Below, piece by piece: positions 4,236 through 47,628 of a stretch of 64,000 nucleotides of DNA. Within the stretch, counting starts at the first letter, position 1, and each line of letters begins with the position of its first letter. The notes below the pieces were generated by a model. It was not told where the DNA came from. It saw nothing but the letters and a program-made list of their open reading frames with translations, and did no database searches. The DNA is from Styela clava. Taxonomy: Eukaryota. The stretch lies in assembly GCF_964204865.1 (NCBI RefSeq), contig NC_135252.1:5456001-5520000 (forward strand), written 5' to 3'. Made by a program: the position numbers and the translations under genes.

Positions 4236-4272
<37 letters not shown>

Positions 4273-17689: not shown

Positions 17690-18029
17690 GATATTTGTAT
17701 TAGTGTTTTCTCGTGAAACCTGTGCATCATAATGACGCACAACCTGAACCATAACCTGTTACAATACTATGTTCAGGTTGTGCGCAATCTTGGTGCACAA
17801 ACTACGCAAGCACCAAATTTACGAAGAAATAAAATCAATACCTTTTAGGTATTTATTGAGATATTTGTATTAGTGTTTTTCGTCAAACATGTGCATCATA
17901 ATGACGCACAACCTGAACCATAACCTGTTACAATACTATGTTCAGGTTGTGCGCAATCTTGGTGCACAAACTACGTAAGCACCAAATTTACTAGGAAATA
18001 AAATCAATAACTTCTAGGTATTTGTTGAG
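17690..18029. repeat. Tandem duplication (~170 bp x2), each copy holding a truncated 110-bp hairpin MITE
   Basis: 17690-17859 and 17860-18029 are nearly identical. Each has gcacaacctgaac...gttcaggttgtgc. Confidence 0.9.
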
Positions 18030-20344: not shown

Positions 20345-21400
20345 TTAAAAAAATTTGCTCAACATTATATACTCCACACCCACTTGGGTATCATTATATA
20401 TGTCATATACATTATATCTAAACAATAAAAAAAACTTTATGTCCCAAAACAATGTTAAGGCCCAATTCTGCCGGACTATTTCTAGATTATGGAACAATTG
20501 GCTTATGATAGTAGGCTAAGTTTTTTTCATTGTTGTATATTCCACTTCCGTTGAAATCTATAGTATATATGTAGGAAATCATGAACTAAATATTCTTACA
20601 TATTACAATTTGAATTTTTTTAATGTTGTATATTCCACTAGAATCGTCAATATTATACCTTAAAATAAGATATTTTATTTGAAAAAATTAAATTTGTTTT
20701 ATTAAAAAATAAAAGGCAATAGGAAACGCTCTTCATATAAATGATGCTATGGAATTTATTCCTCATCATATATACATTATTAAAGATTTATTGATCCAAA
20801 TAAAGTTGGCGGAGACCAGTTATTCACAAGGTCATAAGCGTTTCCGTGCCATATAAAATATTAGCATCTTCTGGCTCTGTTAATTAACATTTGAGTGACC
20901 CGAATATTATCTTGATAGCAGGCTTTTCTACAGGGACTGACATATTGGCAGGAAATATAGACAAATATAGTTTTTAAATTACATGCCACGCAGATTAATG
21001 TTGCGTTGATTTTATGACAATATAATCCCCAATGCTACGAATATCAGTACGTTTATACACGATGCTACACGCCATTAGGGAGAACGAAAATTATAGTGGA
21101 GAATAGCATAATCCTTTGTCAATTATGACTGACGTCCATCCGTTATATAGTGTTTAGATTAATCCAAAAATTACCACAAGAGTTTTAAATAAATATTATA
21201 ATAGAATATAATAACTTATTGCCATGTTATAGCGGACGCAATTATCGGTAATGACGATTTGATTTTCTGGGGAAATTATAAATACCATTGTATTAATAAA
21301 AATAATTAGGCAAAATTATCTCAAATTCAGTATAAATATTGATGTCGGGACTAAAGTTACACCAATTTTTTTACCGAAGTTTCTCTTAAGTTATTCTGCC

Positions 21401-27400: not shown

Positions 27401-30400
27401 GTTACTTCCAAATTATTCATTCATTCATTTCAATTTCGAGACATCTTAAGAACGCCCTGAAAGTTTTTAGATTCGTTTTGCAATATATATATAACGTCAC
27501 TTTTTTACTTGTTCATTAATTTTGAACAATGGACGTAATGCAATGCAATATACATAATGCATGTACATATAATTTACAGAGAAAACACCTTGTCATGATC
27601 ATATTTGTCAAGAAAACAGCTACTGTATTTTGGAAGGAGATAAAGCAATGTGCAAATGTTTAGACGGTTACGCAAGCTCCGACGATGGTTGCAAAAGTAA
27701 GCGAGACTCTTAATCTTACGGTTCCGTAAAATTATATTTAATCGATGTTATACTTTGATATATAATCACTTTGTAAATCTTTGCAATATGTTATACTTTA
27801 ACAAACAAATTACTCTTCCATTCAGAAATTTTCAGCGATCCTTGCAATTTGAGAGTTTGTGGAAATTATGAAGAATGTGTCAGTCAGGAAGGAAAAGGAT
27901 ATTGTGTGTGTAAACCTGGATACACCAAGAACACGAATGGAATTTGTGAACGTATGCTACTACTGTTATTATCTTTCGCTCATTTTAATGCAAACGATCC
28001 AAATTATTTCATTTCATAAGCTAGAAGATGTTAATAGCAAGAAAATACTAATGCCAAGACGTTGTGGGCCTTGAAATAGATCGGTCAATATACTCGACAC
28101 CAATTTTTACTGTGTGTCAATAAATTTATATTATTTTAACGTTTCAGTTCACAATTAGCTTTTTATTTTACACTTAAAAATCTTTGCAGTGAAACAGTAT
28201 GCCGATCCCACAGTTATTGTCTTTTGCATTTCTTAGCGATATTGCCCTGACTCTTTCCTAAGCAAACTTTCTACTTTTTTCAGTAAATAATCCATGCGAA
28301 AAGAAACAATGCCAACCGAATAGTTACTGCGTTCTACCTCAAGGTGAACCAATTTGCCAATGCATTCAAGGATACTCGCTCTCTCCATCAGGCGATTGCA
28401 AAAGTAAGTCATACTTATATATATAAATCGTTTGCTTCCGTAGTATGTGCACCAAGATGGCGCACAACCTGAACAAGGTATGTGTACCGGGTTACGATTC
28501 AGGTTGTGCGCCATCTTGATGCAAGTTCTACGGGAGCGCCCAGAATACAGTAGAAAATATTTGAAAAATAGGATCACAAGCCAAGTAACCTATGAACAAA
28601 TATTTCAATCGGTTTCAACCCAACTGATATTATATTCTAGATTTACCGTTTTCATTTTCCTAATCCGTGATTTTTTTTCTTTGCGCCAAAGAAATCTCCG
28701 TTGATCCATGTTTCTTGAAAAAGTGTCTACCTAATGAAGTGTGCGTTAATAGTGATGGTCAGGGAGTCTGCACTTGTAAAACTGGTTATAGGAGGAACCA
28801 GTACGGATTCTGCGAAAGTATGAGATTTATTCATTTTAACTAATAAGAATATTTCAACCACAAAATAAATAAATAACTGTTGTGAAAAGTAAAAATGATA
28901 TAGTTTGTGACTTGCATAATCATTATTATTTTCCATTATCAGAAGCTACTATGATAGCTTTAAGATACTCAGTGGCCCCCATTTTTTTTAATCCGTGATT
29001 TTTTTCGTGCCTAAGAAATCTCCACTGATCCATGTACCTTGACAAAATGTCTACCTGATGAAGTGTGCGTTAATAGTGATGGTCAAGGAGTCTGCACTTG
29101 TAAACGTGATTATAAGAGGAACCAGTATGGATTCTGCGAAAGTATGATATCGATTTATCATTCATTTTAGCTAATAACAATATTCTAACTTGAAAATAGT
29201 TATCTATTATCTTCTACCTTTATCAGAGGCTTTTATGATAGCTCTAAGATACTTGGTGGTATTCATGTTCTTTATCGTAACCAGTCTTTATATTTTATTG
29301 TATTTATTCATGCCGCTTAAACAGTGCTCAAACTTTCAACAGAAATTGATCCTTGTGTGTATACGAAATGCTTTGAAAATAGCTACTGCGTTGTCGTTGG
29401 CAAACAGGGTATTTGCCAGTGCAAAGATGGCTACAAGATGTCTGCTGATGGAATTTGCCAAAGTATGTTTTACTCTTCTTTCTTACCACGAAGAAGCAAC
29501 AGTCAGGCTGTTGCGAAACAGTTAATATTAAATATTGCATAAATTTTATGATATCATAATGCGGATGTACGAGACTGAAATGTAAAAACGGAAGTAAAAA
29601 TACTGGTAATTTACGATAATTGAATGTAGGCATGTTGACAAATGGAGAATGAAGCTTTGTATTAAATCGAGCGTAGATATTACGAATACTTGACATCGAC
29701 CACTTAAATTAATATGGTAATTTAAATATGGTATATTACGTCATAATATATGTAAAATTTCATCAAATCCTTGAATTAATGATATTTCATTCGATTCGTA
29801 TTTCATAAAGGCGTGAGCACAGATCCTTGTGAGACCAAAATATGCAATTTTCGAAAGGTTTGTGTTGCATATGAGGGACGAGCCCACTGTATTTGCCAAG
29901 CTGGATATTCAGAAAACACCAATGGAAATTGCGAAGGTATGGTTGGAAAATCAACAGGAAAAATTACATATTGAGTTGCAGAATACAAGCTTTCTTACCA
30001 AATATATTATTTTATGCTTTAGCTGACAAGCATCCATGTCATGGCATCGTATGCCCATCATACAGTCACTGTGAGGTCGAGGGATCTTATGGAGTGTGCA
30101 GATGTGACAATAAATACATGGCTAAAGAGGGTCTATGCATACGTGAGTGTTATTTGAAATATGATCCTCATCAGTTGTTATATCAAATGTGGTCTCAAAT
30201 CATACCGCGGTGTCTTCATATTTCTCTTATCTATACTGAATAATATGAGTATGAGAAACACTTATATGATACAATAATATTAATAAGATAATTTGAAATT
30301 TACAAGAAATGTACTGCAATATGACATTCATAACGTTGACTGAAAATGCTATTTGCAGAGTCAGAGAGTATTTAATTTAACTTTACTCTCCAACTTAATT

Positions 30401-33400
30401 TTTTGTCGACTACTGATTTTTTGTAACATTATAATTTTTGGACCTCCTGAAGTATGCTCACCAAGATGGCGCACAACCTGAACTCACGTTGTGTACCAGG
30501 TTAGGGTTCAGGTTATGCGACATCTTGATGCGCATACCTCAGGAGCCCCTCATTTTTGAATATTGCCAATTCTAATGCACTATTTAACAAACAGCTACTT
30601 ATCCATGCCTGGACAAACTGTGCCCAATCGGTAGTCACTGCGTGGATGGACACTGTGTTTGCAAAAGAGGGTATTCAAAGGGTCTTGGTGGCGTTTGCAT
30701 AGGTTTGATATTATTTGTATCCATTGGTATTCAGCATTTTTTAAGATAATCCGCCTGTTTCCCTTTCTATCATGCACAGTAGCTGAATATTCGGTATGCA
30801 TATAACGTAACTTCATGCAAATGTTCTATAATCTTTACGATTTTAATACAAAATGATGTACGATGAACGTTTTTTTACCGTTATCTTGATTTATCTGCAG
30901 ATCGTTGTTCAAACATAAGATGTGCACTTCCGAATACTCATTGTTACGATGGTCAATGCGTATGTAAGGAAGGATTCAGAATGAACCAATATGGGCAATG
31001 CGTGGGTGAGTACAAAACATCTGTGGAATATAGCACTATGCATGCTTTCTGCAATAAACAATGATGGTGCAAAACTAAACATGGCATGTTTTTTTATCAG
31101 AATTTGACCACTGCAGAAACGGACGTCAATGCTCACTAAATAGTTATTGCAACGAAGACAGAATTTGTGTTTGCAATCAGTATTATCATCGAAACATGAA
31201 CGGACTTTGCATAGGTAGGATAATACATATCGTACTCTATAAATACTATTTTGGAATTAAATAAACTTTAGTCATCAACCTACTTTTTTGGTACAATACA
31301 GTGGTATACGATGTTTATAATCCAGTAGGAATTTTCGAACGAAAAAAGATGTGTGTTACGCACATGTATGCTGTGAGAGAAAAATAAGAAAACTATACGT
31401 CGAGCCGAATTTTTACCTCACGCATAGCCGTGATGAAATTTCGTGATCTTACCTCCTGAGTTGCTACTTTTCCCCACTTTAAACTTTTTCATTTGAATAC
31501 AATTCTCAAACATGTATTTTATCCGATTTCTTTGAATATTGACTGGTGTAATCTGTTTTAAAGGTGATAACCCCTGTCTCGGGTTCAAATGCGGATTCAA
31601 TCAAGTTTGCAAAGTGAATGAAGTCAGCCAAAAACCACAATGCGTTTGCTCCTTGGGAACAATATATCTTCCTTTCATGAAAGGATGCATCTGGATTCAT
31701 CTCTTGAGTAAGTAATGCCCTTGACTGTAGTAAAGATTAAGGTCATACATTCATGCGTTAAAATTAACGATTTTTAGTTATAGCAAATCTCGTATTGAGA
31801 ATGCATAGAATCAGAAATATTATAAAAATATTTGAAAATAAACTTGTTTCTGAAAAATCAATGAATATCCTATTTGCTCAACTTTAGTTTTTAGGTTATC
31901 AAACACCGATATATTCCTCTATATTTTCATACTCTGGTGAGTGCCACATACGGATCCGAAGTAGAAAGTAATCAAGGAGAACGGACCTGCAGTTCAATAC
32001 ACAATATCTAAGTTCCCCTAACATAAAATGGCAATTAAAAATAAAATGATTTTATTGAATTTGCACAAATAATTATGATATGAATATTGTTTTCATTTCA
32101 AGTACCTAAAAAGAAGAAGTGCGACCCCGAGTGTCCTCCAAAGTCTTATTGTTCCAAAGGGGAATGCGTGTGTAAAGCTGGATATGTGAAAGATGATTAT
32201 GACCGATGTATTGGTAAGTTTATTTACGTTTTCCGAAATAAATTTGAAAGATCATTTTTTAGACGGCATTTTTGTGTGTAGTTCCTCGTTCAAGATGCGC
32301 TGCATTCATTAGTAAGATACAATCCTTAATAAAGAGTTAAAATGTTGTAAGAAAATGTTTTTGGGTCACAACTTCCATTCTGATTTTTTAAACCATAATT
32401 TGTAATCTTTGATTTTTCAGATCCCGATAGCACTCCGCCACCACGTAAGTACTTAGTAACAATATTGAGAGTATTTTTTACGTTACATTAAATTATTTCT
32501 TTCAAATTAAACATATAATAACACCATTCCGTGACTATTAAACCATAATAATTATTAAAGAGAATAACGTTATCGTCTTTTGGATGGATGAATTATTTAC
32601 GATATTAGTCAAATATTGACAACTAATGGCCAATATGATCATGTATACCTGTCATCTGAAGAGATTCACACAAATAATAACAAATTCCTACCAAAATATT
32701 AGATTTGAATTATTTTTCATTATTTGAATTCAGCAATTGATGAATGCGACTTAGAGCTGGATAATTGTGATCGCACAAACGGATACTGTGTTGATACGCC
32801 TTACTCATATTATTGCCAATGCAACGAAGGATATGTGGGCGATGGAAGAATTTGTAAAGGTATAAATATTTTCTTTTTGGGTGGAAAAATCGAATTTTTG
32901 ATCAAGCTTTTCAGTTATTTTCTGCGCACAGTTCGACTGATTGTGTTTGTCTGATACGATGTTTCAATGAGGTTCGTATGTTTGCTCGTCAATTTGACAT
33001 AGGATAAGGAGTTTCATTCTAGATAGCAAATAGAAGGGAATTGAATGCTTGAATCGGCATTGACAAAAAAAATTATAATTATAGAAAGCCGCTTAGTAAA
33101 ATTATTCTCAATTTTCTTTAATCGATGATTTTCTAATTTTTTTTCATCTTCAGATATCAATGAATGTAATTCTGTTATTCCATCCTGTGATTCGACACAA
33201 AACTGTATCAACACTATCGGTTCGTTTTATTGTGAATGCAAGGATGGATATATCCAGTATGGAGATACATGTAAACCAAAAGGTGAGTCTTCAAAAAACC
33301 TACAATCGTGGGGTTTTCAGCATTTACTCAAAAAACATGAAAATGCAGTCATGCCTGTGAAGCATATCAAAAAAAGAAATATCAAATTCTATTCGAATTT

Positions 33401-36400
33401 GAAATTTCAAACCTTTGATGTTAATTAATGCTATCCCATTAGTCGTTATATTTATTATTTAGTTATAATCCTTGTAAAGGAACTTTTGTAATACATTGTT
33501 TAGGGGTCCTAATCTCTTCTATCTAAATCATACTTTGTACTCTTTGATTTTTAGATCCCGATAGCACTCCGCCACCACGTAAGTGCTTAGTAACAATATT
33601 AAGAGTAATTTTTACGTTACATTAAATTATATTTTTTAAGTCAAACTTATAATAACACCATCCCTTGACTAATAAACCATAATAATCATTAAAGAGAATA
33701 ACGTTATCGTCTTTTGCATTGGATGAATTATTTAAGATATTAGTCAAATTTCGACAACTAATGGCTAAGATAATTATATATACATGTCAATTAAAGAGTT
33801 TCGAATAATTTCTAATTATCACACTAATATTAACAAATTCTTACCGAAATATAAGATTTGAACTATTTTCTAATATTGGAATTCAGCAATTGATGAATGC
33901 GACTTGGAAATGGATAATTGTGATCGTATAAACGGATACTGTGTTGATACGCTTTACTCATATTATTGCCAATGCAATGAAGGATATGTGGGCGATGGAA
34001 GAACCTGTGAAGGTATAAAAATTTTCTTTGTGGGTGGAAAAATTGAATTTTTAATCAAGCTTTCAAGTTTTTTTTTTCTGAACACAAAAAAAAACAATGA
34101 CTTGTTTCGACTGATTGTGTTCGTCTGATACGATGTTTGGATAAAGTTTCAATTTGTTCGTATATGTTTGCTTATCATTTTGATATATGACAAGGAGTTT
34201 TATTCTGGATAGCAAATAAAAATGGAATCGAATGCTTGATAATGTAAATAATAATAACAGAAAGTCGCTTAGTCAATTTATTCTCAATTTGCTTCGATCG
34301 ATGATTTTCTAATTTTTTTTTCATCTTCAGATATCAATGAATGTAATTCTGTTATTCCATCCTGTGATTCGACACAAAACTGTATCAACACTATCGGTTC
34401 GTTTTATTGTGAATGCAAGGATGGATATATTCCGAATGGAGATACATGTAAACCAAAAGGTGAGTCTCTGAAACTCGTGGGGTTTTCAGCATTTACTCAA
34501 AAACATGAAAATGCAGTCATGCCTGTGGAGCATATCAAAAAAATAAATATTAAATTCTATTCGAATCTGAGATTTTAAACCTTTGATGTTAATTAATGCT
34601 ATCCCATTAGTCGTTATATTCATTAGTTAGTTATATAATCCCTGTAAAAGAACTGTTGTAATGACATTTTTTTTCGGTCATAAACTCTATCTCTTCTATC
34701 TCCAATCTAAATTCTAAATCATACTTTGTACTCTTTGATTTTCAGATCCCGATAACACTCCGCCACCACGTAAGTGTTTAGTAACAATATTAAAAGTAAT
34801 TTTTACGTTACATTAAATTATATTTTTAAAGTCAAACTTATAATAACACCATTCCTTGACTAATAAACCATAATGATTATTAAAGAGAATAACGTTATCG
34901 TCTTTTGCATTGGATGAATTGTTTACGATATTAGTCAAATATCGACAACTAATGGCTAAGATAATTGTGTATACCTGTCAATTAAAGAGTTTCGAATAAT
35001 TTCTAATTATCACACTAATATTAACAAATTCTTACCGAAACATTAGATTTGAATTATTTTTTAATATTCGAATTCAGCAATTGATGAATGCGACTTAGAA
35101 ATGGATAATTGTGATCGCATAAACGGATTCTGTGTTGATACACTTTACTCATATTATTGCCAATGCAATGAAGGATATGTGGGCGATGGAAAAATTTGTA
35201 AAGGTACAAAAAAAAATTTGTTTGTGGAAAAATTGAATTTTTGATCAAGTTTTTAAGTTATTTTCTGAGCACAGTAAAAACAATGACTTGTTTCGACTTA
35301 TTGTGTTCGTCTGATACGATGTTTGCTTATCAGTTTGATATATGACAAGGAGTTTGATTCTGGATAGCAAATAAACATGGAATCGAATGCTTGATAATAA
35401 AAATAAAAATAACAGAAAGTCGCTTAGTCAATTTATTCTCAATTTGCTTTAATCGATGATGTTCTGAATTTTTTATCTTCAGATATCAATGAATGTAATT
35501 CTGTTATTCCATCCTGTGATTCGACACAAAACTGTATCAACACTATCGGTTCGTATTATTGTGAATGCAAGGATGGATATATTCCGAATGGAGATACATG
35601 TAAACCAAAAGGTGAGTCTCTGAAACTCGTGGGGTTTTCAGCATTTACTCAAAACATGTAAAGCCAGTCATGCCTGTGAAGCTTGGTTGGACATAGCATA
35701 TCAAAAAAAGAAATATTTAATTCTATTCGAAACTGAGATTTCGAATCTTTGATGTTAATTAATGCTATCCCATTAGTTGTTATATTCACATGCATTAGAA
35801 ATTACTTTATTTTATCACAGAATCCGAAGATCCATGTGATCCAAACCCATGTACGAATGGAAACTGTATTCGCTTGAGTAAAACCGAATTCAAATGTTCG
35901 TGTCCCAAATGGTATGAAGGAAATTATTGCGAAATATGTAAGTATCAACTTTTTCTGGTTTTATTTCTTTGTGATGCACTTGAATATTTGAAAATAATCA
36001 ACATTGACGCTTGTTTGGCATCTTTTTGAAAAAAAATTGGAGAGGATATTGGTTAACAAGAATATATACACAAATAATACATCCATACTTAACAAACAAT
36101 CAACATGTTATCAATCAATTAAAAATGTCTATAATCTTATGACTTTCAAGTTTCAACACATATATCACATTCAATAAATGGAAAACTAACTTTTGACATT
36201 CACGCAATTTTAATTGAACAACTGAACTGCGTATTATTTAATTTCTTTTGATCCGGTTTGGCTTTGTGATCGCGTTATTTGAATAGCGCTACATTGTATT
36301 GTTATTCCAATATCATTCCTTTCAATTTTTCTCCAATTGCAATAACTTAATATTAATTTTGCCACATTAAACAGATAATCCACCCACGGATCCATGTGAC

Positions 36401-39400
36401 CCAAATCCATGTAACGGACATAGCTGTAATAGTTTTAAAGGACTTTACTCGTGTAAATGCAGAAAGGGATATTTTGGAAAACATTGTGATAAAGGTGAGA
36501 CCAAGTTTTTTCATAATTGTAAAACCAAAAACTGGAATTGATTGGAGTCACGCGGAATGGCCCAATACTAATTCGTCTCTAGTGCAACTCTTTCCATATA
36601 TACAATGCAACGTTCCTTCTAGGAATAATTCGAAGTTATTCGACTTCATTTTTCTTAAGTGTTTAGCAAATCTTTTAATTCCTATTTTAGATTGAAAATT
36701 TTCACCTCATTACATTACTTAGGTCAAACCCCATTAAACTCCAAACCCGAGATGGTAGGGTCATTTGTGTAGTGTTTAGTTTGAAACGATCTTAGTTTAG
36801 TTTCAATTGTTGAATAGTAATTATTTGCAAAGTATGACAGCCAATTAAAATTATTGGGTAAATTTACATTTTCTTTCCAAAACCTCTGTTGTTTTTTCCG
36901 TGGGAATAAATTTATTTTCTATAATACATTTATACGATTTGCGGCACGTATTTTCACAAAATGTACTGAATACAAATTTATTAAAATCCAACATATTTAT
37001 ATTCTGTAAACAATTAAAATCACTAGGATTCCCAATACAATCCATCCAATATTCTGGTATGCAGCCAACTAATGTATAGAAGTCTCGATACTCATTTGCA
37101 TTATATTTTATACCGTAACGTTCTATCTGTTGAAAATAAGAGAATAGAAAATTTCTGTTCACCAAATGGTGTAATTCACAGACTCCTTGTTCTTCCCAGT
37201 TTTTTTTTTTTTTTTTATAAAAAATGGCATTCTTGCATATTGGAATTTCTTGTTGTACCATAATGATTCATTATATAGATGGATATTGGCATTACATGTT
37301 AATTCCTTGTATATGTACTAGGTACGAAGTGTATCCCTAAATGTTACAAAATGAAGATTTTTTATGAAGCGCGAGAGTTATACCATAAATTTCCTTTTAG
37401 TATACAATGTATTTCTATATCTCGTAAATAATAAAGTTGAATGGTTTTCCAATTACTCTCTTTCCACTCAACCATACAACCATTTCAGTTTTTCAGAAAT
37501 AATGACACTTTCAACATCTACCATATCAATTCCACCTTTCATTTTCAATCAGTGTTTTACGCTTGACTCTTTCCCAATTTAAATTTCCACAAAAAACGAA
37601 ATATTAAAGAATTCAGTGATTTTACAATTTTTTTGGGTATCGTAACTGGTGAAAATGTAAATTGATAGTAAAAAAAAATAGGATTAATGATTTGATTGCA
37701 AACACTTTTCCCAGAATTGTTAAATATGTTGTATGTATTCATATACTTTACAGAGGATCCACCTAACGGATGTGACCCAAATCCATGCATGAACAGCGTC
37801 AAGTGTATTCCAAAACCCTTCGGAAAGTTTCAATGCCTCTGTAAGAAAGGATATTTTGGAAAACATTGTGATAAAGGTAAGACCAAGTAACTTCATAATT
37901 GTAAAACCATAAACTGGAATTGATTGGAGTCACGCAGAATGAACCAATGCTAATTCGTCTTTGGTGCATCTCTTTACATATATATATACAATGCAACGTT
38001 CAAAGTTATTCGACTTCATTTTTTTCAATTGTGTAGCAAATCTTTTAATTCCTATTTTAGAATGAGCATTTTCACATCATTACATTACTTAGGTCAAACC
38101 CCATTAAACCCCAACTCCGAGATGTTAAGGTCATTTGTGTAGCATTGCAAACAATGGCTATGTTGTAAAATACCTAATTAAATATCTTGACATTGTGTTT
38201 TTGTCTAATATTCTGAATGGTGTTGATAAAACATGGAGTTTTTATATACTGGTGCAAAAATGGAGAATTTAAATTTATAGCTATCACTATACAGCAGGGG
38301 TCGGCAACCTTTTGTCGCTCGCAGGCCAAAATTAGGGATTGCAAGTCATTGGCGGGCCGCACATATTTATAGAAAGTTGAAAACCGAACGGATGATACTT
38401 TTTATAATAAAAATCAAGCAGTGATACATCTCTCGAATAAAATATAGAAATATTTCCTTATTGCATTGCATCTCAAAAAATTTCATTTGAATATTTTCGG
38501 CGCCATTGAACCCTTTGCACTTAGCCTCAACTTTTCTGCGTTTTTTTGTCTAACTATAATCCAATTATAGGTTATAATATTAAACGCGTAATTGTGAATT
38601 ATATATTTGTAGGTTACAGTATAATTTAGTCTACACGTGTCTCACAATAAATTCTGTTACGTATAGAATATAATCATCAAAACAGCTGTTTTGTTACTAT
38701 AATACAGTGAAGCATCACGGGCCGTGGGTTGCCGACCCCTGCTATACAGGTTGTGTCGAGATCTAATGATCCCGATTAAACAAATACTGTGGCCAACAAT
38801 ATAGTTTTTGGAATATTGCAGCATTGATGTTTGACATCTTGGTTTCAATGCATGAATTTGGTTGAATTAGTTTTTCGATTGAGGCCCAAATTTTTTTATT
38901 AATATGCTCAAAACAAATATGTTGTATGTATTTATATATTTTACAGAGGATCCACCTAACGGATGTGACCCAAATCCATGCATGAACAGCGCCGAGTGTA
39001 TTCCAAAACCCTTCGGAATATTTCGATGCATCTGTAAAAAAGGATATTATGGAATGTATTGTGATAAAAGTGAGAAGTTTATTGTTGTTTTCATCCTTAG
39101 TTTGCACGTAATACATTCAATCATTGGTTGCTAATCTGACTCGAGAGATCTACGACTTCTGCCAATAAATTGTATTTTAACTTAGAGATCTTGTGCAGTA
39201 ACAATTATGGAGACGCCAAACAATAGATAAAAGCGAACTGAATAAAATGTAAAAGTTCGTTTATATTAAAAAAATATTATCAATGCAGAAACCTCACCTG
39301 TCAATCCGTGTTATCCAAACCCATGTAAACATGGAGGGAAATGCAATTAGTGAATATACCTTATAGTATGGATTATGAGTATGCGCCTATCAAATATTTC

Positions 39401-42400
39401 TGAATGTCAGCGAAAATCGTCGTTTTTATTCAAAGTCTAAGTTGAAACGGAAAACAAATTCCAAAACTATAATTTTATTCTTCCTACAGAAGACGAAACA
39501 CCCAAAACACCAAAGAATCCTTGCTATCCCAACCCATGTCAAAACGGAAAATGTTTGTCACCACCTGGACAAAAAGGAGGATATAAATGCATTTGCTATA
39601 AAGGTTATAGAGGGGATCACTGCGAATATAGTAAGTTAAATATATCATTTGTGTTCACAGGGTATTACGGCATAAATCGCCTGTATCGGTATATTCTTTA
39701 CATTCTATTTGAGTCCATATAACTTTAAGTAAATTGCTTAATTTGTTTTGTGGTGATTAGTGCATTCCTAAACTCCAGCGAAAAAACGTGTACAACCACA
39801 AGTAGCATTCATTAAAAATACCTGTCTGACTGTCAGCTGAAATTTTAATGCATTTTATTATATTAGTGTAGCATGCAACAAATGCACATTTAAATATGCA
39901 TCTTGTAATTTAGTGAAGGTTCAGATGAAACGTCATGTATGTAAATTGCTGCAAAACCTGTATTTAGCAGTTAGCACTCAATGAGCTGCTGCGTAAATCC
40001 CAATAACATCTATAGTTATTATAGCTATTTACTCGCATTCGGAGTGGAATAATTTAGTGAAGTACAGTAATCTTGATATTGTTGCAAAAGGAAACTGTTA
40101 GTTAGAAACCAAATTCATTTTATTTTAAAACTACCACCAACAGTTATTAATTCAAAAATTGTTAAATTGGCTGATTCTTCTGGAAATTCACTTGCATGTT
40201 TTTGAGTTACATCCACATAACAACTTATTTAACTCTTTTGTTCAGAAAATCCAAAAACACCTAGTAAATGCTACCCGAATCCGTGCCAAAACGGTGGAAA
40301 GTGCTACAAGAAAATGTTTGGATATCAGTGCAGTTGTGCGAAAGGATACTACGGAAAACACTGCGAATATTGTACGTAACTCAAAGGAACTAGATCAACT
40401 TTTACTTGTTCATTTGCATGCCAAATTGTGAAAATGCTGATCCCCAGCTATTATTGAGCGAGGTTGGAGACATTCGAATCCCTACCATTGGTGGCTTATG
40501 TCCTATGTCTACTATGAAGAATTCTTTTTTTTTTAACATATCAACGAAAAACGCGTGTAACTTACAAATCCATATAGAAAATGTATTACCTTTTTTCAGA
40601 CAAACCAAAAACACCTACTCCGAAAAATAAATGCTACCCGAATCCATGCCAACACGGTGGAAAATGCTTTGAAAAAATGTATGGATACGAATGCCGGTGC
40701 GCGAAAGGATACTGGGGCGAAAACTGCCAATACAGTAAGTAGATAAAGTTGTGTGATATTCACCACTTCATTATTTTCTGCAAAAACCTAGTTAATAGTG
40801 TTGATATTAAAAAAAATGTGGCATTACTCTACTCTTGTATATGGCTTGTTTATGCTCAAAATTACCATTTGTTTGCGAGCCAACTTGTTAGTTAAAGACT
40901 AAGTTAAAACGGAAAACAAATCCCAAACATTTATTTTTATTCTTCCTACAGAAGACGAAACACCCAAAACACCAAAGAATCCTTGCTATCCTAACCCATG
41001 TCAAAACGGAAAATGTTTGTCACCACCTGGACAAAAAGGAGGATATAAATGCATTTGCTATAAAGGTTATAAAGGGGATCACTGCGAATACAGTAAGTTA
41101 AATATCCTATTTAGGTTCACAATAACTTACGGCATAATTCGCCGGTATCGGTATAGACTTTACAATCTGTTAGAGTTCATATGACTTTAAGCAAATCACA
41201 GACCTTTGTTTTGAGGCAATTAGTACATATCTTGGTATGGATTATGCGTATGGGCATATCAAAAATTCTTAAATGTCAGCGAAAATCGTGTAATTAGCAT
41301 CCATTAAAAATAACTATCTGACCGCCAGCTGAAATTTGAATGCATTTTATTATATTAGTATGAGGCACGTTTAAAATGCATCATGCAATTTAAAAAGGTT
41401 CAGACTAATGAATCTTCATATATGTAAATTGCTGCAAACACTGTGTTTAGCACTCAATGAGCTGCGTAAATCTCAATAACATCTATAGTTAATAGCTATT
41501 TGGTCTCATTCGGAGTGGAATCGTTTAGTGAGGTACAGTAATCTTGATATTGTTGCAAACGAAAACTGTTAATTAAAAATCGAATCCATTTTAGTAAAAC
41601 TACCGCCAAAAATTATTAATTCAAAAATTGTTAAATTGGCTGTTTCTTCTGGAAATTTACTCGAATTTGTTTGAGTTACCATCCACATAACAACTTATTT
41701 AACTCTTTTGTTCAGAAAATCCAAAAACGCCCAAAACACCAAAAACACCTAATAAATGCTACCCGAATCCGTGTCAAAACGGCGGAAAGTGCTACAAGAA
41801 AATGTTTGGATATCAGTGCAGTTGTGAGAAAGGATACTATGGAAAACACTGCGAATATTGTACGTAACTCAAAGGAACTAGATCAACTTATACTTGTTCA
41901 TTTGCATGTCAAATTGTAAAATTGCTGATCCCAAACTATTAATACGCGAGGGTGAAGACATTCGAATCCCTACCATTGGTGGCTTATGTCTTATGTCTGC
42001 TATAAAAAATTCTTTTTATTTCAACACATCAACGAAAAACGTGTGGATCTTACAAATCCATATAGTAAATGTATTACCTTTTTCCAGACAAACCAAAAAC
42101 ACCTACTCCAAAAGATAAATGCTACCCGAATCCATGCCAACACGGTGGAAAATGCTTTAAAAAAATGTATGGATACGAATGCCGGTGCGTGAAAGGATAC
42201 TGGGGCGAAAACTGCCAATACAGTAAGTAGATAAAGTTGTGTGATATTTAACACTTCATTATTTTCTGCAATAACCTAGTTAATAGTGTTGATATTGAAA
42301 AAATGTGGCATTACTCTACTCTTGTATATGGCTTGTTTATGCTCAAAATTACCATTTGTTTGCGAGCCGATTTGTTAGTTAGGGACTAAGCTAAAACGGG

Positions 42401-45400
42401 AAACAAAACCCAAACATTTATTTTTATTCTTCTTACAGAAGACGAAACACCCAAAACACCAAAGAATCCTTGCTATCCCAACCCATGTCAAAACGGAAAA
42501 TGTTTGTCACCACCTGGACAAAAAGGAGGATATAAATGCATTTGCTATAAAGGTTATAGAGGGGATCACTGCGAATATAGTAAGTTAAATATCGTCACGC
42601 TAATAACCGAACTGCGTAAGTCATTTTTGGCGATTTTGAGTTTTTTTATAAAATAGGTATTTATGTAATGCTGCGCACCTGTCTGTTAACTCAGATTTCA
42701 TTTCAAGAATTCCGAAACCAATAAAAATGGAGATTTAGTATAACATGCACATTTGTGCAATTGTTTCGTCATAATGAATTATCATTGGTGCCGTAGGACT
42801 ATTGTGACGTCACAAAGGAAAAATAACCTCGGCTAAGTATTTTCGAGTTTTTGCATCTCGAATTCTAGCTTAACACGTATTAATTTGAATTTATACTACA
42901 GTATAGGAAGGCGTGCACTTGTGATATTCACTGTCCGAGTCCAATTCACCTTGGTAGGCTTTTATATTGGGTGCATTGCTGTTTTATTCTTTATAATTAA
43001 TCTTAGTCTTATTTCGGTGGGTGCGCAGAACTTGTTATATTATTGAAATATATATTTTTAAACATAAAAAATAATGTAATTGAAACTGATTAGCTATTTT
43101 TGGGATTAGACATTGTAGATACTGAAAATAACATTCGTTTTTGGAATGTTTAGTTTTCAAGACAGGTGCATATAGTAAAGTTGCAAAATTGCGTATGTCC
43201 CCAAGTCATAGACACATTTCTGCCTAAGTCACAGTGCGCCATTATGACGTCACTTAACTGCGTCATACAAATTAACTTAAATCCGGCTACGATTAAAAAA
43301 TTGAACCACGGCAAATTATTGACTCTCAATGACAAAACAATATCATTAGGAAGTTTTTTACGTTTTTCTCAAAACTGCTAAAAATGACTTACGCAATTCG
43401 GTTATTAGCGTGACGAATCATTTGTGTTCACAGGAAATTACGGCATAACTCGCCTGTATCGGTATATTCTTTACATTCTGTTTGAGTCCATGTAACTTTA
43501 AGTAAATTGCCCATTTTTTTGTGTGGTAATTAATGCATACTTAGCATGGATTGTGCGTATGTGGCTATGAAAGATTCCTAAACTTCAGCGAAAAAACGTG
43601 TACAACCACAAGTAGCATTCATTAAAAATAACTATCTGGCCGTCAGCTGAAATTTTAATGCATTTTATTATATTAGTGTAACATGCAACAAATGAACATT
43701 TAAATATGCATCTTGTAATTTAGTGAAGTTTCAGATAAAACGTCATGTATGTAAATTGCTGCAAAACCTGTATTTAACACTCAATGAGCCGCGTAAATCC
43801 CAATAACATCTATATTTTTTAGCTGTTCACTCGCATTCGGAGAGGAATAGTTTAGTGAAGTAAAGTATTCTTGGTATTAAAAAAAACTGTTAATTAGAAA
43901 GCGAATCCATTTTAGTTTAAAACTACCGCCAAAAATTATTAATTCGAAAATTGTTAAATTGGCTGTTTCTTCTGGAAATTCGCTCGCATTTTTTAGAGTT
44001 AGCCTACATCCACATAACTTATTTAACTATTTTGTTCAGAAAATCCAAAAACGCCCAAAACACCAATAACACCTGATAAATGCTACCCGAATCCATGCCA
44101 AAACGGCGGGAAGTGCTACAAGAAAATGTTTGGATATCAGTGCAGTTGTGAGAAAGGATACTACGGAAAACACTGCGAATATTGTACGTAAATCAAAGGA
44201 ACTAGATCAACTTTTACTTGTTCATTTGTATGTCAAATTGTAAAAATGCTGATCCCCAGCTATTATAATAATTCTTCTATAAAAAAAAATTTCTCAACAC
44301 CTCAACGAAAAACGTGTGAAACTACAGATCCATATATATAGTAAATGAATTACCTTTTTCAGACAAACCGAAAACACCTACTCCAAAAGATAAATGCTAC
44401 CCGAATCCATGCCAACACGGTGGAAAATGCTTTAAAAAAATGTATGGATACGAATGCCGTTGCGTGAAAGGATACTGGGGCGAAAACTGCCAATACAGTA
44501 AGTAGATAAAGTTGCGTGATATTTAACACTTCATTATTTTCTGCAATAATCTAGTTAATAGTGTTGATATTAAAAAAATGTGGCATTACTCTACTCTTGT
44601 ATATGGCTTGTTTATGCTCAAAATTACCATCTGTTTGCGAGCCGATTTGTTTTTAACATATCTTTAAAAAAGGACAGTTTCAGTCCTGTATCACACCTTT
44701 AATAAATAATTTTTGTAAAATATATGTCAGATGATACACTAAAAAATGCTGAAAGTAGAGTGTTGCTCTTGAGAAATATCCCGTTAACAACTACTTGCAA
44801 ACAGTAACATTTCCTAGCAAATCTAATTTTTTTTGGTATTTTCGACCATTAGGATGCTGATATCATCTTTCCATTAAATATTCTCATGTTATTCTCAATT
44901 TTAAGTAATAGCAACTTTTATTTATCTTTGTTTCAGAAAAAAATAGTCCGAAAACTCCCCCAAAAAGCAAATGTTATCCAAATCCATGTATGCACGACGG
45001 TGAGTGCTACGTAACTATGTTTGGGTACAAATGCAGTTGCAAAAAAGGATATACTGGGAATAACTGTCAATACAGTAAGTATTTATCAATATACATTCAT
45101 TCTGTCATGACGAGGTTATAACCGTTTTTATTTGATAGAAGTTTGAATATTGATGGGACGGTCTCGGTTCGTTGTTATTAAATTCGCCATAACGTGGTTA
45201 CCAAACGCTTACACAAAATGAAATATTTTAACTTGAGTATCACTCAATAAATGGCAATTATTACGACATTCCGCCCGTTTAACGCTACTTTCAACCAAAT
45301 TTGAAGATTGTGGATGTTTACTATTCGTAGTTTTAGCTTTGTCCATCGAAAAAGTGCCCGGACAGTACTTTTGACGTAGTAGTGAATGAAATTACAGAGA

Positions 45401-47024
45401 ATAAGTTTATTCTACAGCTTTTTTTATAGGTTTTATTGGCGAAAGTGCTTGTTTGTGATTGATTCCAACATTTCTTTAGAATACAATTCATCTCCTAAAC
45501 CCAAAGACCGGTGTGATCCTAACCCATGTGCAAACGGTGGAACGTGCAAGAAATCGTTTTATGGATACAAATGCGATTGTCCCAAGGGATATACTGGAAA
45601 ACATTGTGAATCAAGTAAGTTTCTGATTTGACAAAATTATAAATTATTTTGAATAACGCTTAAAAATAAACATTTTGAGGAAATAATACTTCAAGAATAT
45701 TCACGTATTTTTCCTACTCCTGGTTTACGCCAGACTTCATAAACAAAAAGTTACCATTTGCAATAAAAAATCTGGTATAATTTACTCGACTGGTAAAAAC
45801 AGAGTCGGTGTGACTGAAATACATTTTTAATGCGCCGAAGAATATCTATTAGAACAATTTGATTTATTTTGAGAAAACAAAATTAAATCAAATTAAACAA
45901 CAGAAAATAATGATGCAATTTTGCAGCGAGTTTATATATAAGAGTGTCATGAATTCATTGTGAATTTAATCTCCAGTATAAGGCGTGTTGAGCTTATTTT
46001 TGTTTTCTTTTTAGAATACAACAACCCATCTCCTAAACCAAAAGGACGATGTAATCCTAACCCGTGCAGAAATGGTGGAACGTGTAGATCTTCGTTGTTT
46101 GGATACAATTGCAACTGTCCCTATGGGTATTATGGAAAACGATGCGATTCGAGTAAGCTTATTTTTTAAGTTGTGTCACGAACAAACGATATCAGCCAGG
46201 GGTTAACACGTGTATTACATTATTGTCATTGCTCACTTTACCAATGTACAAGATTTAGATTAGGTAAGATTTTAATAGACAAATGGTCATCCACAAACAT
46301 CACTTGCAAATTATTTGTTTTAGTCTTTAAACAATAAGAAATATTTTAGGCAATACCTATCAGTATTTTTCGTTATAAAAAAAAAACAGATAAGAATATT
46401 TAGCACTAAGAGTGCGTTGTATCTTGCTGGACCAGCGTTAATGCCAAATCTTATCGTAATTGTCACGATAAATTGATAATTATCGCCATTATCACTTATT
46501 ACAAGTTGCGCTGTTGGAATAGTGGTGCGTCTAAGTACGTATGTTTAATCATCTTCCATCAGTTCGTTTGTAAGTACTGATCTTCGACTATAATTAGTGG
46601 AATTCATCTCGGGGCGCTCCGCTTGATATCAAACAATATTGACTAAATGACATCTCCAATACCATTTTTTTTATGAAGTCATTTAATACTCTATTGAAGT
46701 CATATATCTATGTATAAAAAGTGAAAATTAGAGTTGTAAAATCTATTTTTTTTCTCGTTTGACACTGATTGCTCTAATAAACTCTTTACTTTTGTAGAAA
46801 AGGGTGGATCTCCGAAGAGCAAGGGTTCGCCAAAAGGATCACCTAAAAAAAACTCGCCGAAAGGTTATTCACCCAAGAAAAAAACATCAAAAGGTTATTC
46901 ACCCAAGAAAAAAACACCAAAAGGAGATTCACCTAAGAAAAAATGGCCTAAAGGAAATTCACCAAAAAGTAATTCCCCAAAAGGTGGTAACAAAAAAAAG
47001 AAGGGCTCACCAAGAAGAGGTTAA
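21401..47024 (+). CDS. Large secreted EGF-repeat protein (~52 exons, ~45 EGF modules including 6 calcium-binding type, ~2030 aa) with a basic SPKK-repeat C-terminal tail
   Basis: Signal peptide exon 21401-21455 ([19 protein letters not shown]). Phase 1-1 exons start at 23446, 23660, 24068 (linker), 24441, 25103, 25661, 25890, 26259, 26556, 26870, 27123, 27580, 27826, 28284, 28692, 29016, 29343, 29811, 30023, 30595, 30901, 31101, 31564, 31895 (linker), 32103, then 3x[24-nt microexon + 2 cbEGF] from 32421/33555/34746, then 35821, 36375, 37754, 38947, then 3x[3 EGF] from 39490/40952/42439, then 44937, 45480 and 46015. The last exon is 46798-47024. All introns are GT-AG, all exons are open, and the total is 6099 nt. 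The two short linker exons are less certain. Confidence 0.88.
28431..28540. mobile_element. 110-bp hairpin MITE copy (intronic)
   Basis: gcaccaagatggcgcacaacctgaa...ttcaggttgtgcgccatcttgatgc...gggagcgcc. Confidence 0.85.
28661..29260 (+). repeat. Recent ~324-bp tandem duplication of one EGF exon plus flanking intron
   Basis: Exons 28692-28817 and 29016-29141 are nearly identical, and the intron flanks (taatccgtgattttttt; ttatcaga.gct..tatgatagct.taagatact) are shared. Confidence 0.9.
30440..30549. mobile_element. 110-bp hairpin MITE copy with imperfect 8-bp TSD
   Basis: ggacctcctgaagtatg...catacctcaggagcccc, flanked by taattttt / tcattttt. Confidence 0.85.
32400..35790 (+). repeat. Tandem triplication (periods 1134 and 1191 bp) of microexon + two calcium-binding EGF exons
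   Basis: Microexons at 32421, 33555, 34746 (DPDSTPPP); IDECDLE.DNCDR exons at 32734, 33887, 35078; [12 protein letters not shown] exons at 33154, 34331, 35483. The introns also align. Confidence 0.95.
36773..37720 (-). mobile_element. Degraded L1/Tx1-clade LINE ORF2 fragment (post-RT region) in an EGF-gene intron
   Basis: The minus strand, across frameshifts, reads [48 protein letters not shown] and later [30 protein letters not shown], which are typical L1/Tx1 ORF2 motifs. Confidence 0.75.
38295..38741. mobile_element. hAT (Buster/Charlie-type) MITE, 447 bp
   Basis: Perfect 15-bp TIRs caggggtcggcaacc / ggttgccgacccctg and a perfect 8-bp TSD ctatacag (38287-38294, 38742-38749) with central TA. 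Confidence 0.95.
39289..39350 (+). pseudogene. Truncated EGF pseudo-exon inside the EGF gene
   Basis: After the acceptor ...tgcag the frame reads [19 protein letters not shown] (3 of 6 Cys), then runs into sequence homologous to the intron at ~41218-41290. Confidence 0.8.
39430..44650 (+). repeat. Tandem triplication (periods 1462 and 1487 bp) of a three-EGF-exon unit
   Basis: Exon triplets 39490/40246/40600, 40952/41716/42089 and 42439/44040/44363. Introns align, and copy 3 carries an 825-bp insertion. Confidence 0.95.
42592..43416. mobile_element. Non-autonomous DNA transposon, ~825 bp, with ~49-bp TIRs
   Basis: TIR tcgtcacgctaataaccgaa(c/t)tgcgtaagtcattttt at both ends. The element is absent from the paralogous introns at 39631 and 41093. 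The TSD is ambiguous (AT/TA-rich). Confidence 0.9.
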
Positions 47025-47628
47025 TTAAACTGTCGGTCTCCCAGCAATGAGATACTATTTATAACAGAAGGAACATAACAATACATTTGTGTAATTTAAT
47101 TTATAATATGTATAATCCTGAATTTATGTATGGAGCAATGCCTGCTGAATCTGTAATAGATTAACGCAAGATGCAAAAAAATGTTTTTCATTATTTCGAT
47201 ATACGGGTGTGGAACTGACATCAGGACTGACATCAGAAGATTTCTTAAAGCTTGTACAGTCGAGACTTCGCAAAGTGATCACGCACGATATCGCCCCTCG
47301 CGGAATTGAAAGTTTCGAATATTCGACGCGTGTGGGACTCATTATTCTCAGATAGTTTCCGTACGCGTTTTTTGACAGGTAGATTATATTAATGAGTTAC
47401 GCCTCCATTCACAAGTCACGTAGTTGCACCTGGACTTACGATAAAGCCATCTTATAAGCTTCAATCCCCAATTGTAACATATACGCTTTCTATAGTTGAA
47501 ACATATCCAAACTACTCACAGTTTCAAACGCATAAGACTATGCCGAATATCTGCGGCATCATTCGTCAGTAGTTTGGTTTACATTCCTAATAAAGTCCTT
47601 GTCGAGGTAGAAATAAAATATTTCGGAC

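What the first reader, a model, noticed from the sequence alone, without database searches (positions are those of the whole stretch)
46798..47024. Histone-like SPKK tail on a secreted protein
Seen: the last exon encodes [75 protein letters not shown]. That is 75 aa with 26 Lys, 2 Arg, 1 Asp and ten SP(K/R) motifs, built partly from a 30-nt repeat. This frame is missing from the ORF track. Established: SPKK/SPRR repeats are the DNA minor-groove-binding motifs of histone H1 and sea urchin sperm histones. Inference: outside the cell the tail may bind polyanions (sulfated glycans, extracellular DNA, mineral or microbial surfaces), drive coacervation, act as an antimicrobial peptide, or supply lysines for quinone cross-linking.
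Basis: partly seen in the sequence, partly recalled or inferred. Interest (0 to 1): 0.75.

Follow-up and report, generated by a model that had tools for sequence, protein, structure and literature searches.

The report
Lysine-rich SPK tail on EGF protein
The last exon of a very highly transcribed gene for a giant EGF-repeat protein, predicted to be secreted, really does encode a 75-residue, strongly positive Ser-Pro-Lys tail; it looks like an overgrown inter-domain linker of a glue- or matrix-type protein, not a histone relative.

Summary
Exon 46798-47024 (+) encodes the quoted 75-residue tail: 26 Lys, 2 Arg, 1 Asp, ten SP(K/R), and five 30-nt repeats. RNA contigs from 3 of 4 runs laid (2 studies) join 46152^46798 at GT..AG. 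One 811-nt contig spans the last four exons, and a poly(A) tail follows 47181.

The tail has no relatives. It occurs once in its own genome. It matches no Pfam family. None of 43 HMMER hits among 1.84 billion proteins carries an EGF array, and no histone appears in the PDB search.

In my exon model (only the last four exons are RNA-confirmed) the gene has 47 phase-1 exons: a signal peptide, 45 EGF modules and the tail. The last twelve EGF modules are Lys/Tyr/Pro-rich (+68 net charge) and are joined by (T/S)PK linkers. The tail reads as the terminal, expanded linker.

Best reading is a disordered polycationic anchor or cross-link module of a secreted matrix/adhesive protein; this function is inferred and untested. 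"Histone-like" applies to the motif only. The tissue is unknown.

Earlier scan notes call the genome the sea squirt Styela clava and record polybasic tails on other secreted proteins elsewhere in it.

The parts
46798..47024 (+). Terminal coding exon (phase 1) encoding the 75-residue SPK/SPKK polycationic tail plus the TAA stop
   Evidence: Translation; composition and shuffle test; splice joint 46152^46798 in RNA contigs of X1, X2 and X5.
46839..46988 (+). Five tandem 30-nt units encoding decapeptides SPKK(K/N)xxKGx
   Evidence: TRF period 30, 4.2 copies, 83% matches; register printed. The decapeptide DNA pattern clusters only here in the genome (4 of 33 hits, against 30 hits for the reversed-pattern control).
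47025..47181 (+). 3' UTR up to the poly(A) addition site
   Evidence: Contigs of X1 and X2 end at 47181 and run on as 19 A's that are not in the genome (table 7).
46153..46797 (+). Last intron (GT..AG, 645 nt)
   Evidence: Joint table. Unspliced contigs have word depth 43 (X1) and 28 (X2), against about 3,700 and 2,900 for the spliced joint.
44937..46152 (+). Last three EGF exons (44937-45074, 45480-45614, 46015-46152), RNA-confirmed, each starting with an SPK-type linker ([26 protein letters not shown])
   Evidence: Joints 45074^45480 and 45614^46015 in 4 of 4 runs; Pfam EGF; peptides.
39490..44497 (+). Nine Lys/Tyr-rich EGF exons forming a 3-exon cassette repeated three times, with TPK linkers (e.g. 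[14 protein letters not shown])
   Evidence: EGF scan; exon model; direct repeats with 1462-1488 nt spacing at 72-92% identity.
35821..39069 (+). Four Notch-type EGF exons with acidic or neutral linkers (class c1)
   Evidence: predicted.
32734..35611 (+). Six calcium-binding EGF exons (a pair repeated three times), net charge -29
   Evidence: Pfam EGF_CA at 2.1e-11 and 7.1e-07 for 2 exons tested; charge; repeat D3. Predicted.
23446..32213 (+). 23 divergent EGF-like exons (class a), near-neutral
   Evidence: The 2 exons tested hit EGF-type Pfam families only weakly: EGF_MSP1_1 at 6.9e-05 and Pvs28 EGF at 2.1e-07. Predicted.
21401..21455 (+). Predicted first coding exon: signal peptide [18 protein letters not shown] with a phase-1 donor; TATAAATA lies at 21331-21338
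   Evidence: Hydrophobicity scan; sequence. Inference only: no RNA evidence was obtained for this end.

Best explanation
The exon encodes the C-terminal end of a roughly 1,970-residue secreted protein built from 45 EGF modules. The tail is an intrinsically disordered polycation (+27 net charge in 75 residues). It probably arose by slippage-type expansion of the (S/T)PK linker that precedes each of the last twelve EGF modules. Together with that Lys/Tyr/Pro-rich EGF block (+68) it forms a strongly cationic C-terminal third. I infer that this region sticks the protein electrostatically to polyanionic partners outside the cell. Candidate partners are sulfated glycans of a tunic, mucus or cell coat, anionic catechol peptides, or the protein's own acidic calcium-binding EGF block. 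Its lysine amines would also be available for oxidative (quinone) cross-linking into a matrix. Shown here: the splicing, the reading frame, polyadenylation, very high RNA contig depth, the composition, the uniqueness of the tail, and the linker series. Inferred: secretion, the full 47-exon model, disorder, polyanion binding and cross-linking.
For: The splice joint and poly(A) are seen in RNA contigs, and exon contigs have word depths of about 2,000-19,000 in X1/X2. There is no hydrophobic core: apart from Gly, Pro and 4 Asn, the only uncharged side chains are Ser, Thr, two Tyr and one Trp. Net charge by block is class a +3 over 914 aa, cbEGF -29 over 255 aa, last twelve EGFs +68 over 551 aa (K 16.7%, Y 11.8%, P 12.3%), and tail +27 over 75 aa. 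The linkers grade into the tail: [40 protein letters not shown], then [16 protein letters not shown]. Just after the acceptor, the tail's CCGAAGAGCAAGGGT lines up with exon 44's CCAAAAAGCAAATGT, so the tail has Gly where the first Cys codon of the EGF exons stands. The Lys/Tyr-rich EGF exon matches the mussel adhesive PVFP-5 (7qab, 3.2e-13) as well as Notch. Flatworm cohesive adhesive proteins combine EGF-rich cores with Gly/Arg/Lys low-complexity flanks, and heparin abolishes attachment (PMC9229212, passages read). In a stolidobranch tunicate holdfast, anionic sulfo-Ser/halogenated-DOPA peptides are cross-linked oxidatively into a protein-rich cuticle whose matrix proteins are not identified (PMC13079984, abstract, section 8 and passages).
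Against: No tissue or cell type is known because the run labels are coded, so 'matrix/adhesive' rests on composition alone. No orthologue could be examined, so conservation of the tail is unknown. It could be a neutral, recent slippage product. The only within-species data are one synonymous change (46847 A>G) and no indels in 3 runs. The 5' two-thirds of the gene model, including the signal peptide and the acidic block, are predicted and not RNA-confirmed. The EGF exon scores higher against Notch1 (3.2e-26) than against PVFP-5, so the similarity to mussel proteins is generic EGF plus composition. Polybasic runs (KKKK, RR) could be trimmed by proteases before or after secretion.
Confidence: 0.5

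Rival explanations
1. The tail is a functionally neutral or merely spacer-like expansion. On this reading it is the last inter-EGF linker, expanded by replication slippage. It might be O-glycosylated or Pro-hydroxylated like other Ser/Thr/Pro linkers, would serve at most as a flexible hydrated end, and would have no specific binding partner.
For: The five 30-nt units are 83% alike, which suggests a young repeat. (T/S)PK linkers occur throughout the last twelve EGF exons. The gene is full of recent tandem duplications. There are no homologues anywhere and no second copy in the genome.
Against: The tail is far more basic (35% Lys) than the linkers and ends in [10 protein letters not shown], which is not linker-like. 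All spliced contigs of 3 runs carry it at the same length with only a synonymous change. It sits on an already cationic block, which suggests that charge is the selected property.
Confidence: 0.2
2. The tail is a packaging or processing segment. It would neutralise acidic cargo or the protein's own acidic cbEGF block inside secretory granules, and it would be clipped at its polybasic sites on or after secretion.
For: The protein has a charge-block architecture: -29 in the cbEGF block against +95 in the C-terminal third. Polybasic KKK/KKKK/RR runs are present. RNA contig depth is very high, as expected of a bulk secretory product.
Against: There is no canonical furin-type R-x-K/R-R site in the tail (read by eye). 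No protein-level data exist. The acidic block is only predicted to lie in the same transcript.
Confidence: 0.1
3. The tail is a releasable cationic antimicrobial or antifouling peptide carried by a matrix protein.
For: The charge is +27 with one Trp and two Tyr. From recall, ascidian haemocytes make Lys-rich modified antimicrobial peptides.
Against: No amphipathic or hydrophobic face is possible with this composition. No release site is evident. Pfam gives no antimicrobial family for the tail.
Confidence: 0.07
4. The tail is a true histone-like DNA binder. It would bind the DNA minor groove through SPKK beta-turns, either on extracellular DNA or after entry to a nucleus.
For: There are five canonical S/T-P-K/R-K/R motifs plus seven SPKx, TPKx or WPKx. 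The SPKK motif is a known minor-groove binder in H1 and sea-urchin sperm histones (recalled: Suzuki 1989).
Against: The tail is attached to 45 disulfide-rich EGF modules behind a predicted signal peptide. There is no histone domain. No histone appears among PDB matches up to E = 10. None of the 43 best library hits has an EGF array, and no linker-histone family is among the 25 of 42 Pfam families shown for them.
Confidence: 0.03

Closest known systems
SPKK motifs of histone H1 and sea-urchin sperm H1/H2B tails (recalled: Suzuki 1989)
   Same: Tandem S/T-P-K/R-K/R tetrapeptides in a Lys-rich, disordered terminal tail. Five canonical motifs occur here.
   Different: There is no histone fold or H15 domain and no sequence homology. 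The tail is attached to an EGF array behind a predicted signal peptide, so it is extracellular. Half of the motifs are SPKG or SPKS, not SPKK.
Flatworm temporary-adhesion cohesive proteins (Mlig-ap1 with Gly/Arg/Lys flanks; Tmed-ap1 with 19 EGF domains plus the separate GRKHS-repeat protein Tmed-ap3), PMC9229212 (passages)
   Same: A secreted, EGF-rich protein combined with a highly basic low-complexity terminal region. The positive charge is proposed to mediate binding to a negatively charged partner, and heparin blocks attachment.
   Different: The flatworm flanks are hundreds to thousands of residues of GRK(HS) repeats, and the cores also carry C-type lectin, vWD, C8, TIL and vWC domains. 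Here I found only EGF modules and a 75-residue SPK tail, with no sequence similarity.
Mussel EGF-type foot proteins (Pvfp-5beta, PDB 7qab; Mfp-2 from recall)
   Same: Tandem six-Cys EGF modules that are unusually rich in Tyr and Lys. The last twelve modules have K 16.7% and Y 11.8%, and PVFP-5 is hit at 3.2e-13.
   Different: Notch1 and DLL1 score higher (3.2e-26, 7.7e-24), so the similarity is generic EGF plus composition, which points to convergence rather than orthology. To my recollection the mussel proteins have no SPK tail. DOPA is unknown here.
Ascidian vitelline-coat EGF proteins (HrVC120/HrVC70, CiVC57), PMC9265791 (passages)
   Same: Ascidian secreted proteins with 12-24 EGF repeats. 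The O-fucosylation consensus C2-X-X-G-G-S/T-C3 is present in the last two EGFs here (CANGGTC, CRNGGTC).
   Different: Those proteins end in a ZP domain (CiVC57 also has a transmembrane domain). This transcript ends in the SPK tail and is polyadenylated 157 nt later.
Lys-rich heparin-binding tails of small secreted Cys-rich factors (pleiotrophin/midkine, HB-EGF, amphiregulin; recalled)
   Same: A disordered Lys-rich segment beside disulfide-rich modules that holds a secreted protein on sulfated glycans.
   Different: Those are small signalling proteins with short tails and no SPK periodicity. This is a giant, very abundant, structural-looking protein.

Membership tests
Histone SPKK tail (H1, sperm H1/H2B) | Repeated S/T-P-K/R-K/R tetrapeptides | tested here: met
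   Five canonical motifs, ten SP[KR] in 75 aa; shuffle mean 0.79, maximum 5 in 20,000.
Histone SPKK tail (H1, sperm H1/H2B) | Tail attached to a histone fold or linker-histone globular domain | tested here: not met
   Pfam finds 0 families in the tail. The three preceding exons are EGF PF00008, and 44 EGF-pattern exons lie upstream.
Histone SPKK tail (H1, sperm H1/H2B) | Detectable sequence relationship to histone tails | tested here: not met
   PDB phmmer up to E = 10 gives 5 hits: four designer SAKe proteins and LPP2, no histone. The 43 library hits are unrelated xPK-type repeats. No linker-histone family is among the 25 of 42 Pfam families shown.
Histone SPKK tail (H1, sperm H1/H2B) | Nuclear protein that binds the DNA minor groove | not testable with these tools
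   A predicted signal peptide and the EGF body argue for an extracellular location. Binding needs an experiment.
Mussel-type EGF adhesive proteins (Mfp-2, Pvfp-5) | Tandem six-Cys EGF modules | tested here: met
Mussel-type EGF adhesive proteins (Mfp-2, Pvfp-5) | Tyr- and Lys-rich composition | tested here: met
   The last twelve EGF exons have K 16.7%, Y 11.8% and net charge +68 over 551 aa.
Mussel-type EGF adhesive proteins (Mfp-2, Pvfp-5) | Specific sequence kinship beyond generic EGF | tested here: inconclusive
   PVFP-5 7qab scores 3.2e-13, but Notch1 scores 3.2e-26 and DLL1 7.7e-24 with the same exon.
Mussel-type EGF adhesive proteins (Mfp-2, Pvfp-5) | Tyr converted to DOPA; protein present in the adhesive or gland | not testable with these tools
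   There are no protein data, and run labels are coded, so the tissue is unknown.
Flatworm ap1-type cohesive protein | EGF-rich secreted core with a basic low-complexity flank | tested here: met
   the family description comes from PMC9229212.
Flatworm ap1-type cohesive protein | C-type lectin, vWD, C8, TIL and vWC domains in the core | tested here: inconclusive
   My exon scan looked only for EGF Cys patterns. The introns are short and no other domain was seen, but I ran no search for the other domains.
Ascidian vitelline-coat EGF-ZP proteins (VC120/VC70, VC57) | C-terminal ZP domain (CiVC57 also has a transmembrane domain) | tested here: not met
   After the last EGF the coding sequence continues only into the SPK tail, reaches the stop at 47022-47024, and poly(A) follows 47181.

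The most novel reading that the evidence does not exclude
A chordate (tunicate) has independently built a mussel-foot-protein-like glue or cuticle protein. It is a 45-EGF giant whose acidic calcium-binding block and +95 Lys/Tyr C-terminal block, capped by the SPK tail, would make it coacervate. It could do so with itself, with sulfated tunic glycans, or with the anionic halogenated-DOPA peptides of the holdfast. The tail would act both as the electrostatic sticker and as the Lys donor that fixes those catechol peptides into the cuticle. If so, the tail names the missing matrix partner in tunicate adhesion.
Probability: 0.2. Interest if true: 0.65.

Novelty: new variant of a known kind. Interest (0 to 1): 0.42.

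Why it matters
If the reading holds, this is one of the most abundantly transcribed secreted proteins in the samples that hold it. It would be a candidate structural or adhesive component of a fouling sea squirt, built on the same Lys/Tyr-rich EGF theme as mussel glue proteins. It adds a lineage-specific polycationic end that is small enough to synthesise and test. That would give a concrete protein partner to look for in tunicate cuticle and holdfast chemistry, where only small catechol peptides have been identified. It would also be another independent case of 'EGF array plus basic low-complexity flank' in animal bioadhesion. As a histone analogue it does not matter, because the resemblance is only a motif.

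Tried and rejected
**Relatives of the tail**
- HMMER against 1.84 billion representatives gave 43 hits at E <= 0.001, best 1.9e-19.
- I read 10 of the 43 hits in full, printed 6 more, and scanned all 43 by regex and Pfam.
- None of the 43 has an EGF array (one has a single Cys-pattern match). All are unrelated x-P-K or x-P-x tandem repeats.
- There was no self hit, which says nothing because the library holds only 50%-identity representatives.
- The word-index search with the tail gave 0 hits. It sees only proteins of 41-129 aa, so it cannot exclude long relatives.
- Rejected: the idea that the tail belongs to a conserved family.

**Literature**
- Three peptide motifs from the gene were not found in the held full texts.
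- Searches on Styela clava, EGF, adhesive and tunic found no description of this protein. These are the only searches behind 'not seen in print'.
Protein lists in the supplements of PMC13079984, PMC12992692 and tunicate transcriptome papers could name this protein, and I could not see them.

**Readings rejected**
- Egg-coat protein of the VC70 type: there is no ZP domain.
- Alternative 3' ends: only one minor joint, 46260>46795, at depth 8 in X2, plus unspliced contigs at about 1% of the exon depth.

**Organism**
- I did not identify it myself. Earlier AI notes say Styela clava.
- A GH6 domain in the own genome, absent from the 14 control genomes, fits a tunicate. That GH6 in animals is a tunicate trait is from recall.

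**Not done**
- The spliced protein model was never joined and never sent to any search or fold.
- No structure prediction was run, because the tail has no foldable composition.
Full report
**What is in the sequence**

Positions 46798-47024 on the + strand follow an AG acceptor at 46796-46797. Read from 46800 they give [74 protein letters not shown], then TAA.

The counts are 26 Lys, 2 Arg, 1 Asp, no Glu, ten SP[KR], and five canonical S/T-P-K/R-K/R. Shuffling the same residues 20,000 times gives a mean of 0.79 SP[KR] and never more than 5. The motif density therefore comes from repeat structure, not from composition.

TRF finds a 30-nt period with 4.2 copies at 83% matches. In register there are five decapeptides SPKK(K/N)xxKGx at 46839-46988.

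The frame is missing from the mechanical ORF list, which needs an ATG/GTG/TTG start. Only the other frame, 46804-47028, is listed.

**Is it expressed and joined as claimed?**

Yes. I laid contigs of four runs on 44800-47400.
- The joint 46152^46798 (GT..AG, 645 nt skipped) is present in X1, X2 and X5, which come from two studies.
- In X5 a single 811-nt contig covers 44937-45074, 45480-45614, 46015-46152 and 46798-47169.
- X6 carries the two upstream joints and a contig over 46922-47166, but no contig across the last joint.
- Contigs of X1 and X2 end at 47181 and continue with 19 A's that are not in the genome, so the mRNA is polyadenylated there. The tail exon is the last exon.
- Exon contigs have word depths of thousands in X1 and X2. 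Contigs that retain the introns have depths of 8-45. Contig depth is a poor measure, but the spliced form clearly dominates.
- The only difference in the tail is a synonymous A>G at 46847 in all three runs. No indels were reported there.
- One minor joint (46260>46795, depth 8, X2 only) was seen.

The three upstream exons are 138, 135 and 138 nt and phase 1-1. They hit Pfam EGF at 3.7e-07, 3e-10 and 2.6e-07. This fixes the tail's reading frame.

The run labels are coded and none is on record as RNA. The spliced joints and poly(A) show that these contigs derive from RNA.

**The gene around it**

A scan for six-Cys EGF patterns finds 44 such open segments on the + strand between 23671 and 46145, and none on the - strand. 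Every one has AG/GT boundaries in phase 1.

At 21401-21455 there is an ATG followed by [18 protein letters not shown] and a phase-1 GT donor. TATAAATA lies at 21331-21338.

My model has 47 exons and 1,974 residues: a signal peptide, 23 divergent EGF-like modules, six calcium-binding EGFs (a pair repeated three times), 16 Notch-type EGFs, and the tail. Only the last four exons are RNA-confirmed. The rest is prediction.

Net charge by block:

| Block | Net charge | Length (aa) |
|---|---|---|
| Divergent EGF-like modules (class a) | +3 | 914 |
| Calcium-binding EGFs | -29 | 255 |
| Last twelve EGFs (K 16.7%, Y 11.8%, P 12.3%) | +68 | 551 |
| Tail | +27 | 75 |

Those last twelve EGF exons each begin with a (T/S)PK linker. 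Examples are [59 protein letters not shown] and [12 protein letters not shown]. The tail then starts [18 protein letters not shown].

Aligning the four last acceptor regions puts the tail's CCGAAGAGCAAGGGT against exon 44's CCAAAAAGCAAATGT. The tail thus has a Gly codon where the EGF exons have their first Cys codon. This is suggestive rather than conclusive for such simple sequence.

I read the tail as the terminal linker of this series, expanded by tandem duplication. The gene is otherwise full of recent tandem duplication: a 3-exon cassette repeated three times at about 1.46-1.49 kb spacing, and a cbEGF pair unit at 1.19 kb spacing.

**Relatives**

- The tail is unique in its genome. A six-frame protein search finds only itself at E <= 10.
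- The degenerate decapeptide DNA pattern gives 33 genome hits against 30 for the reversed control. The only cluster is the 4 hits in this exon.
- The linker-bearing EGF exon finds 119 EGF exons in the genome. The linker part (query positions 1-9) aligns almost only in this gene; three other loci start at 5-7.
- Pfam finds nothing in the tail.
- HMMER against 1.84 billion cluster representatives gives 43 hits at E <= 0.001. None has an EGF array and all are unrelated proline-lysine type tandem repeats.
- The word-index search gives nothing, but it is blind outside 41-129 aa.
- PDB sequences give only designer repeat proteins and one LPP2 chain up to E = 10, and no histone.

I therefore could not retrieve a full-length annotated model or long orthologues. 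No other tunicate genome was reachable. Conservation of the tail across species is unknown, and this is the main gap.

**What it most likely does**

The protein body is made only of disulfide-rich EGF modules behind a predicted signal peptide. The tail therefore works outside the cell.

It has almost no hydrophobic residues and a net charge of +0.36 per residue, so it should be a disordered polyelectrolyte (inference). It caps an already strongly cationic, Tyr-rich EGF block.

That composition is what mussel EGF-type foot proteins look like. The exon tested hits PVFP-5 (7qab) at 3.2e-13, although Notch1 (3.2e-26) and DLL1 (7.7e-24) score higher, so this is generic EGF plus convergent composition.

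A secreted EGF-rich protein with basic low-complexity flanks is a known design in flatworm temporary adhesion. There the positive charge is proposed to mediate binding, and heparin blocks attachment (PMC9229212, passages).

In the holdfast of the stolidobranch tunicate Halocynthia, small anionic peptides with sulfo-Ser and about 50 mol% (halogenated) DOPA are cross-linked oxidatively into a protein-rich cuticle. Its matrix proteins are not named (PMC13079984, abstract, section 8 and passages). A Lys-rich tail would be a natural electrostatic partner and amine donor for them. This is my inference and is not stated in that paper.

I therefore favour an electrostatic anchor and cross-link module of a matrix or adhesive protein (confidence 0.5). 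The rivals are:
- a neutral or spacer expansion (0.2);
- a granule-packaging or clipped segment (0.1);
- a releasable antimicrobial peptide (0.07);
- true DNA binding (0.03).

**Comparison with known families**

The tail meets the SPKK motif definition. It fails every other feature of histone tails that I could test.

The protein is not a vitelline-coat EGF-ZP protein, because it has no ZP domain (PMC9265791, passages).

It works like, but cannot be shown to be a member of, the mussel or flatworm adhesive families.

**Organism and earlier notes**

Earlier AI notes of this scan call the genome the sea squirt Styela clava. They list other secreted proteins with polybasic Lys/Pro segments and another Mfp-2-like EGF gene elsewhere in the genome. 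None covers this locus.

I checked only that the genome holds a GH6 domain. This fits a tunicate; that GH6 in animals is a tunicate trait is from recall. The 376.8-Mb assembly size and the roughly 33% GC of this window are compatible with that.

**Verdict**

The histone analogy is superficial. The tail is the charged tip of a lineage-specific, very highly transcribed, Lys/Tyr-rich multi-EGF secreted protein. It is a new variant of a known design principle. Its function, tissue and conservation are still untested.

Noticed in passing
window 39423-44497: A three-exon EGF cassette (about 1.46-1.49 kb) is tandemly triplicated at 72-92% identity. The third copy has a longer intron (2,324 nt spacing).
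   Followed up: partly
window 32734-35611: A pair of calcium-binding EGF exons (AIDECD... and DINECN...) is repeated three times (about 1.19 kb unit, 95% identity). It forms an acidic block (-29) in an otherwise neutral-to-basic protein.
   Followed up: partly
window 45480-46152: The last two EGF modules carry CANGGTC and CRNGGTC. These fit the O-fucosylation consensus C2-X-X-G-G-S/T-C3 quoted in PMC9265791. The nine cassette modules (exons 35-43) have Lys at that position (e.g. QNGGKC).
   Followed up: no
window 45575: All three RNA runs that cover it read T where the assembly has G. By my hand count this changes Asp to Tyr in KCDC of the penultimate EGF, so it is an allele or an assembly difference.
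   Followed up: no
window 46260-46795: A minor alternative joint that skips 534 nt is seen in one contig of X2 only (depth 8, against about 2,900 for the main joint).
   Followed up: no
window 9603-10271 (-): A 222-aa open frame looks to me (recall only, not searched) like the C-terminal catalytic part of a glycosyltransferase of the fucosyltransferase type.
   Followed up: no
window 62653-63042 (+): An open frame of Gly-X-Y triplets, i.e. a collagen exon. It belongs to the downstream gene that another first-stage note places from about 51.5 kb.
   Followed up: no
G000 C18:12.11-12.18 Mb; C5:11.795-11.805 and 18.81-18.84 Mb; C1:15.84-15.99 Mb: The own genome holds several other very large arrays of single-exon Notch-type EGF modules. 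Most of the 119 hits at E <= 1e-5 lie there (a lower bound). Nearly all start at query position 8-13, so they lack the TPK linkers of this gene.
   Followed up: no
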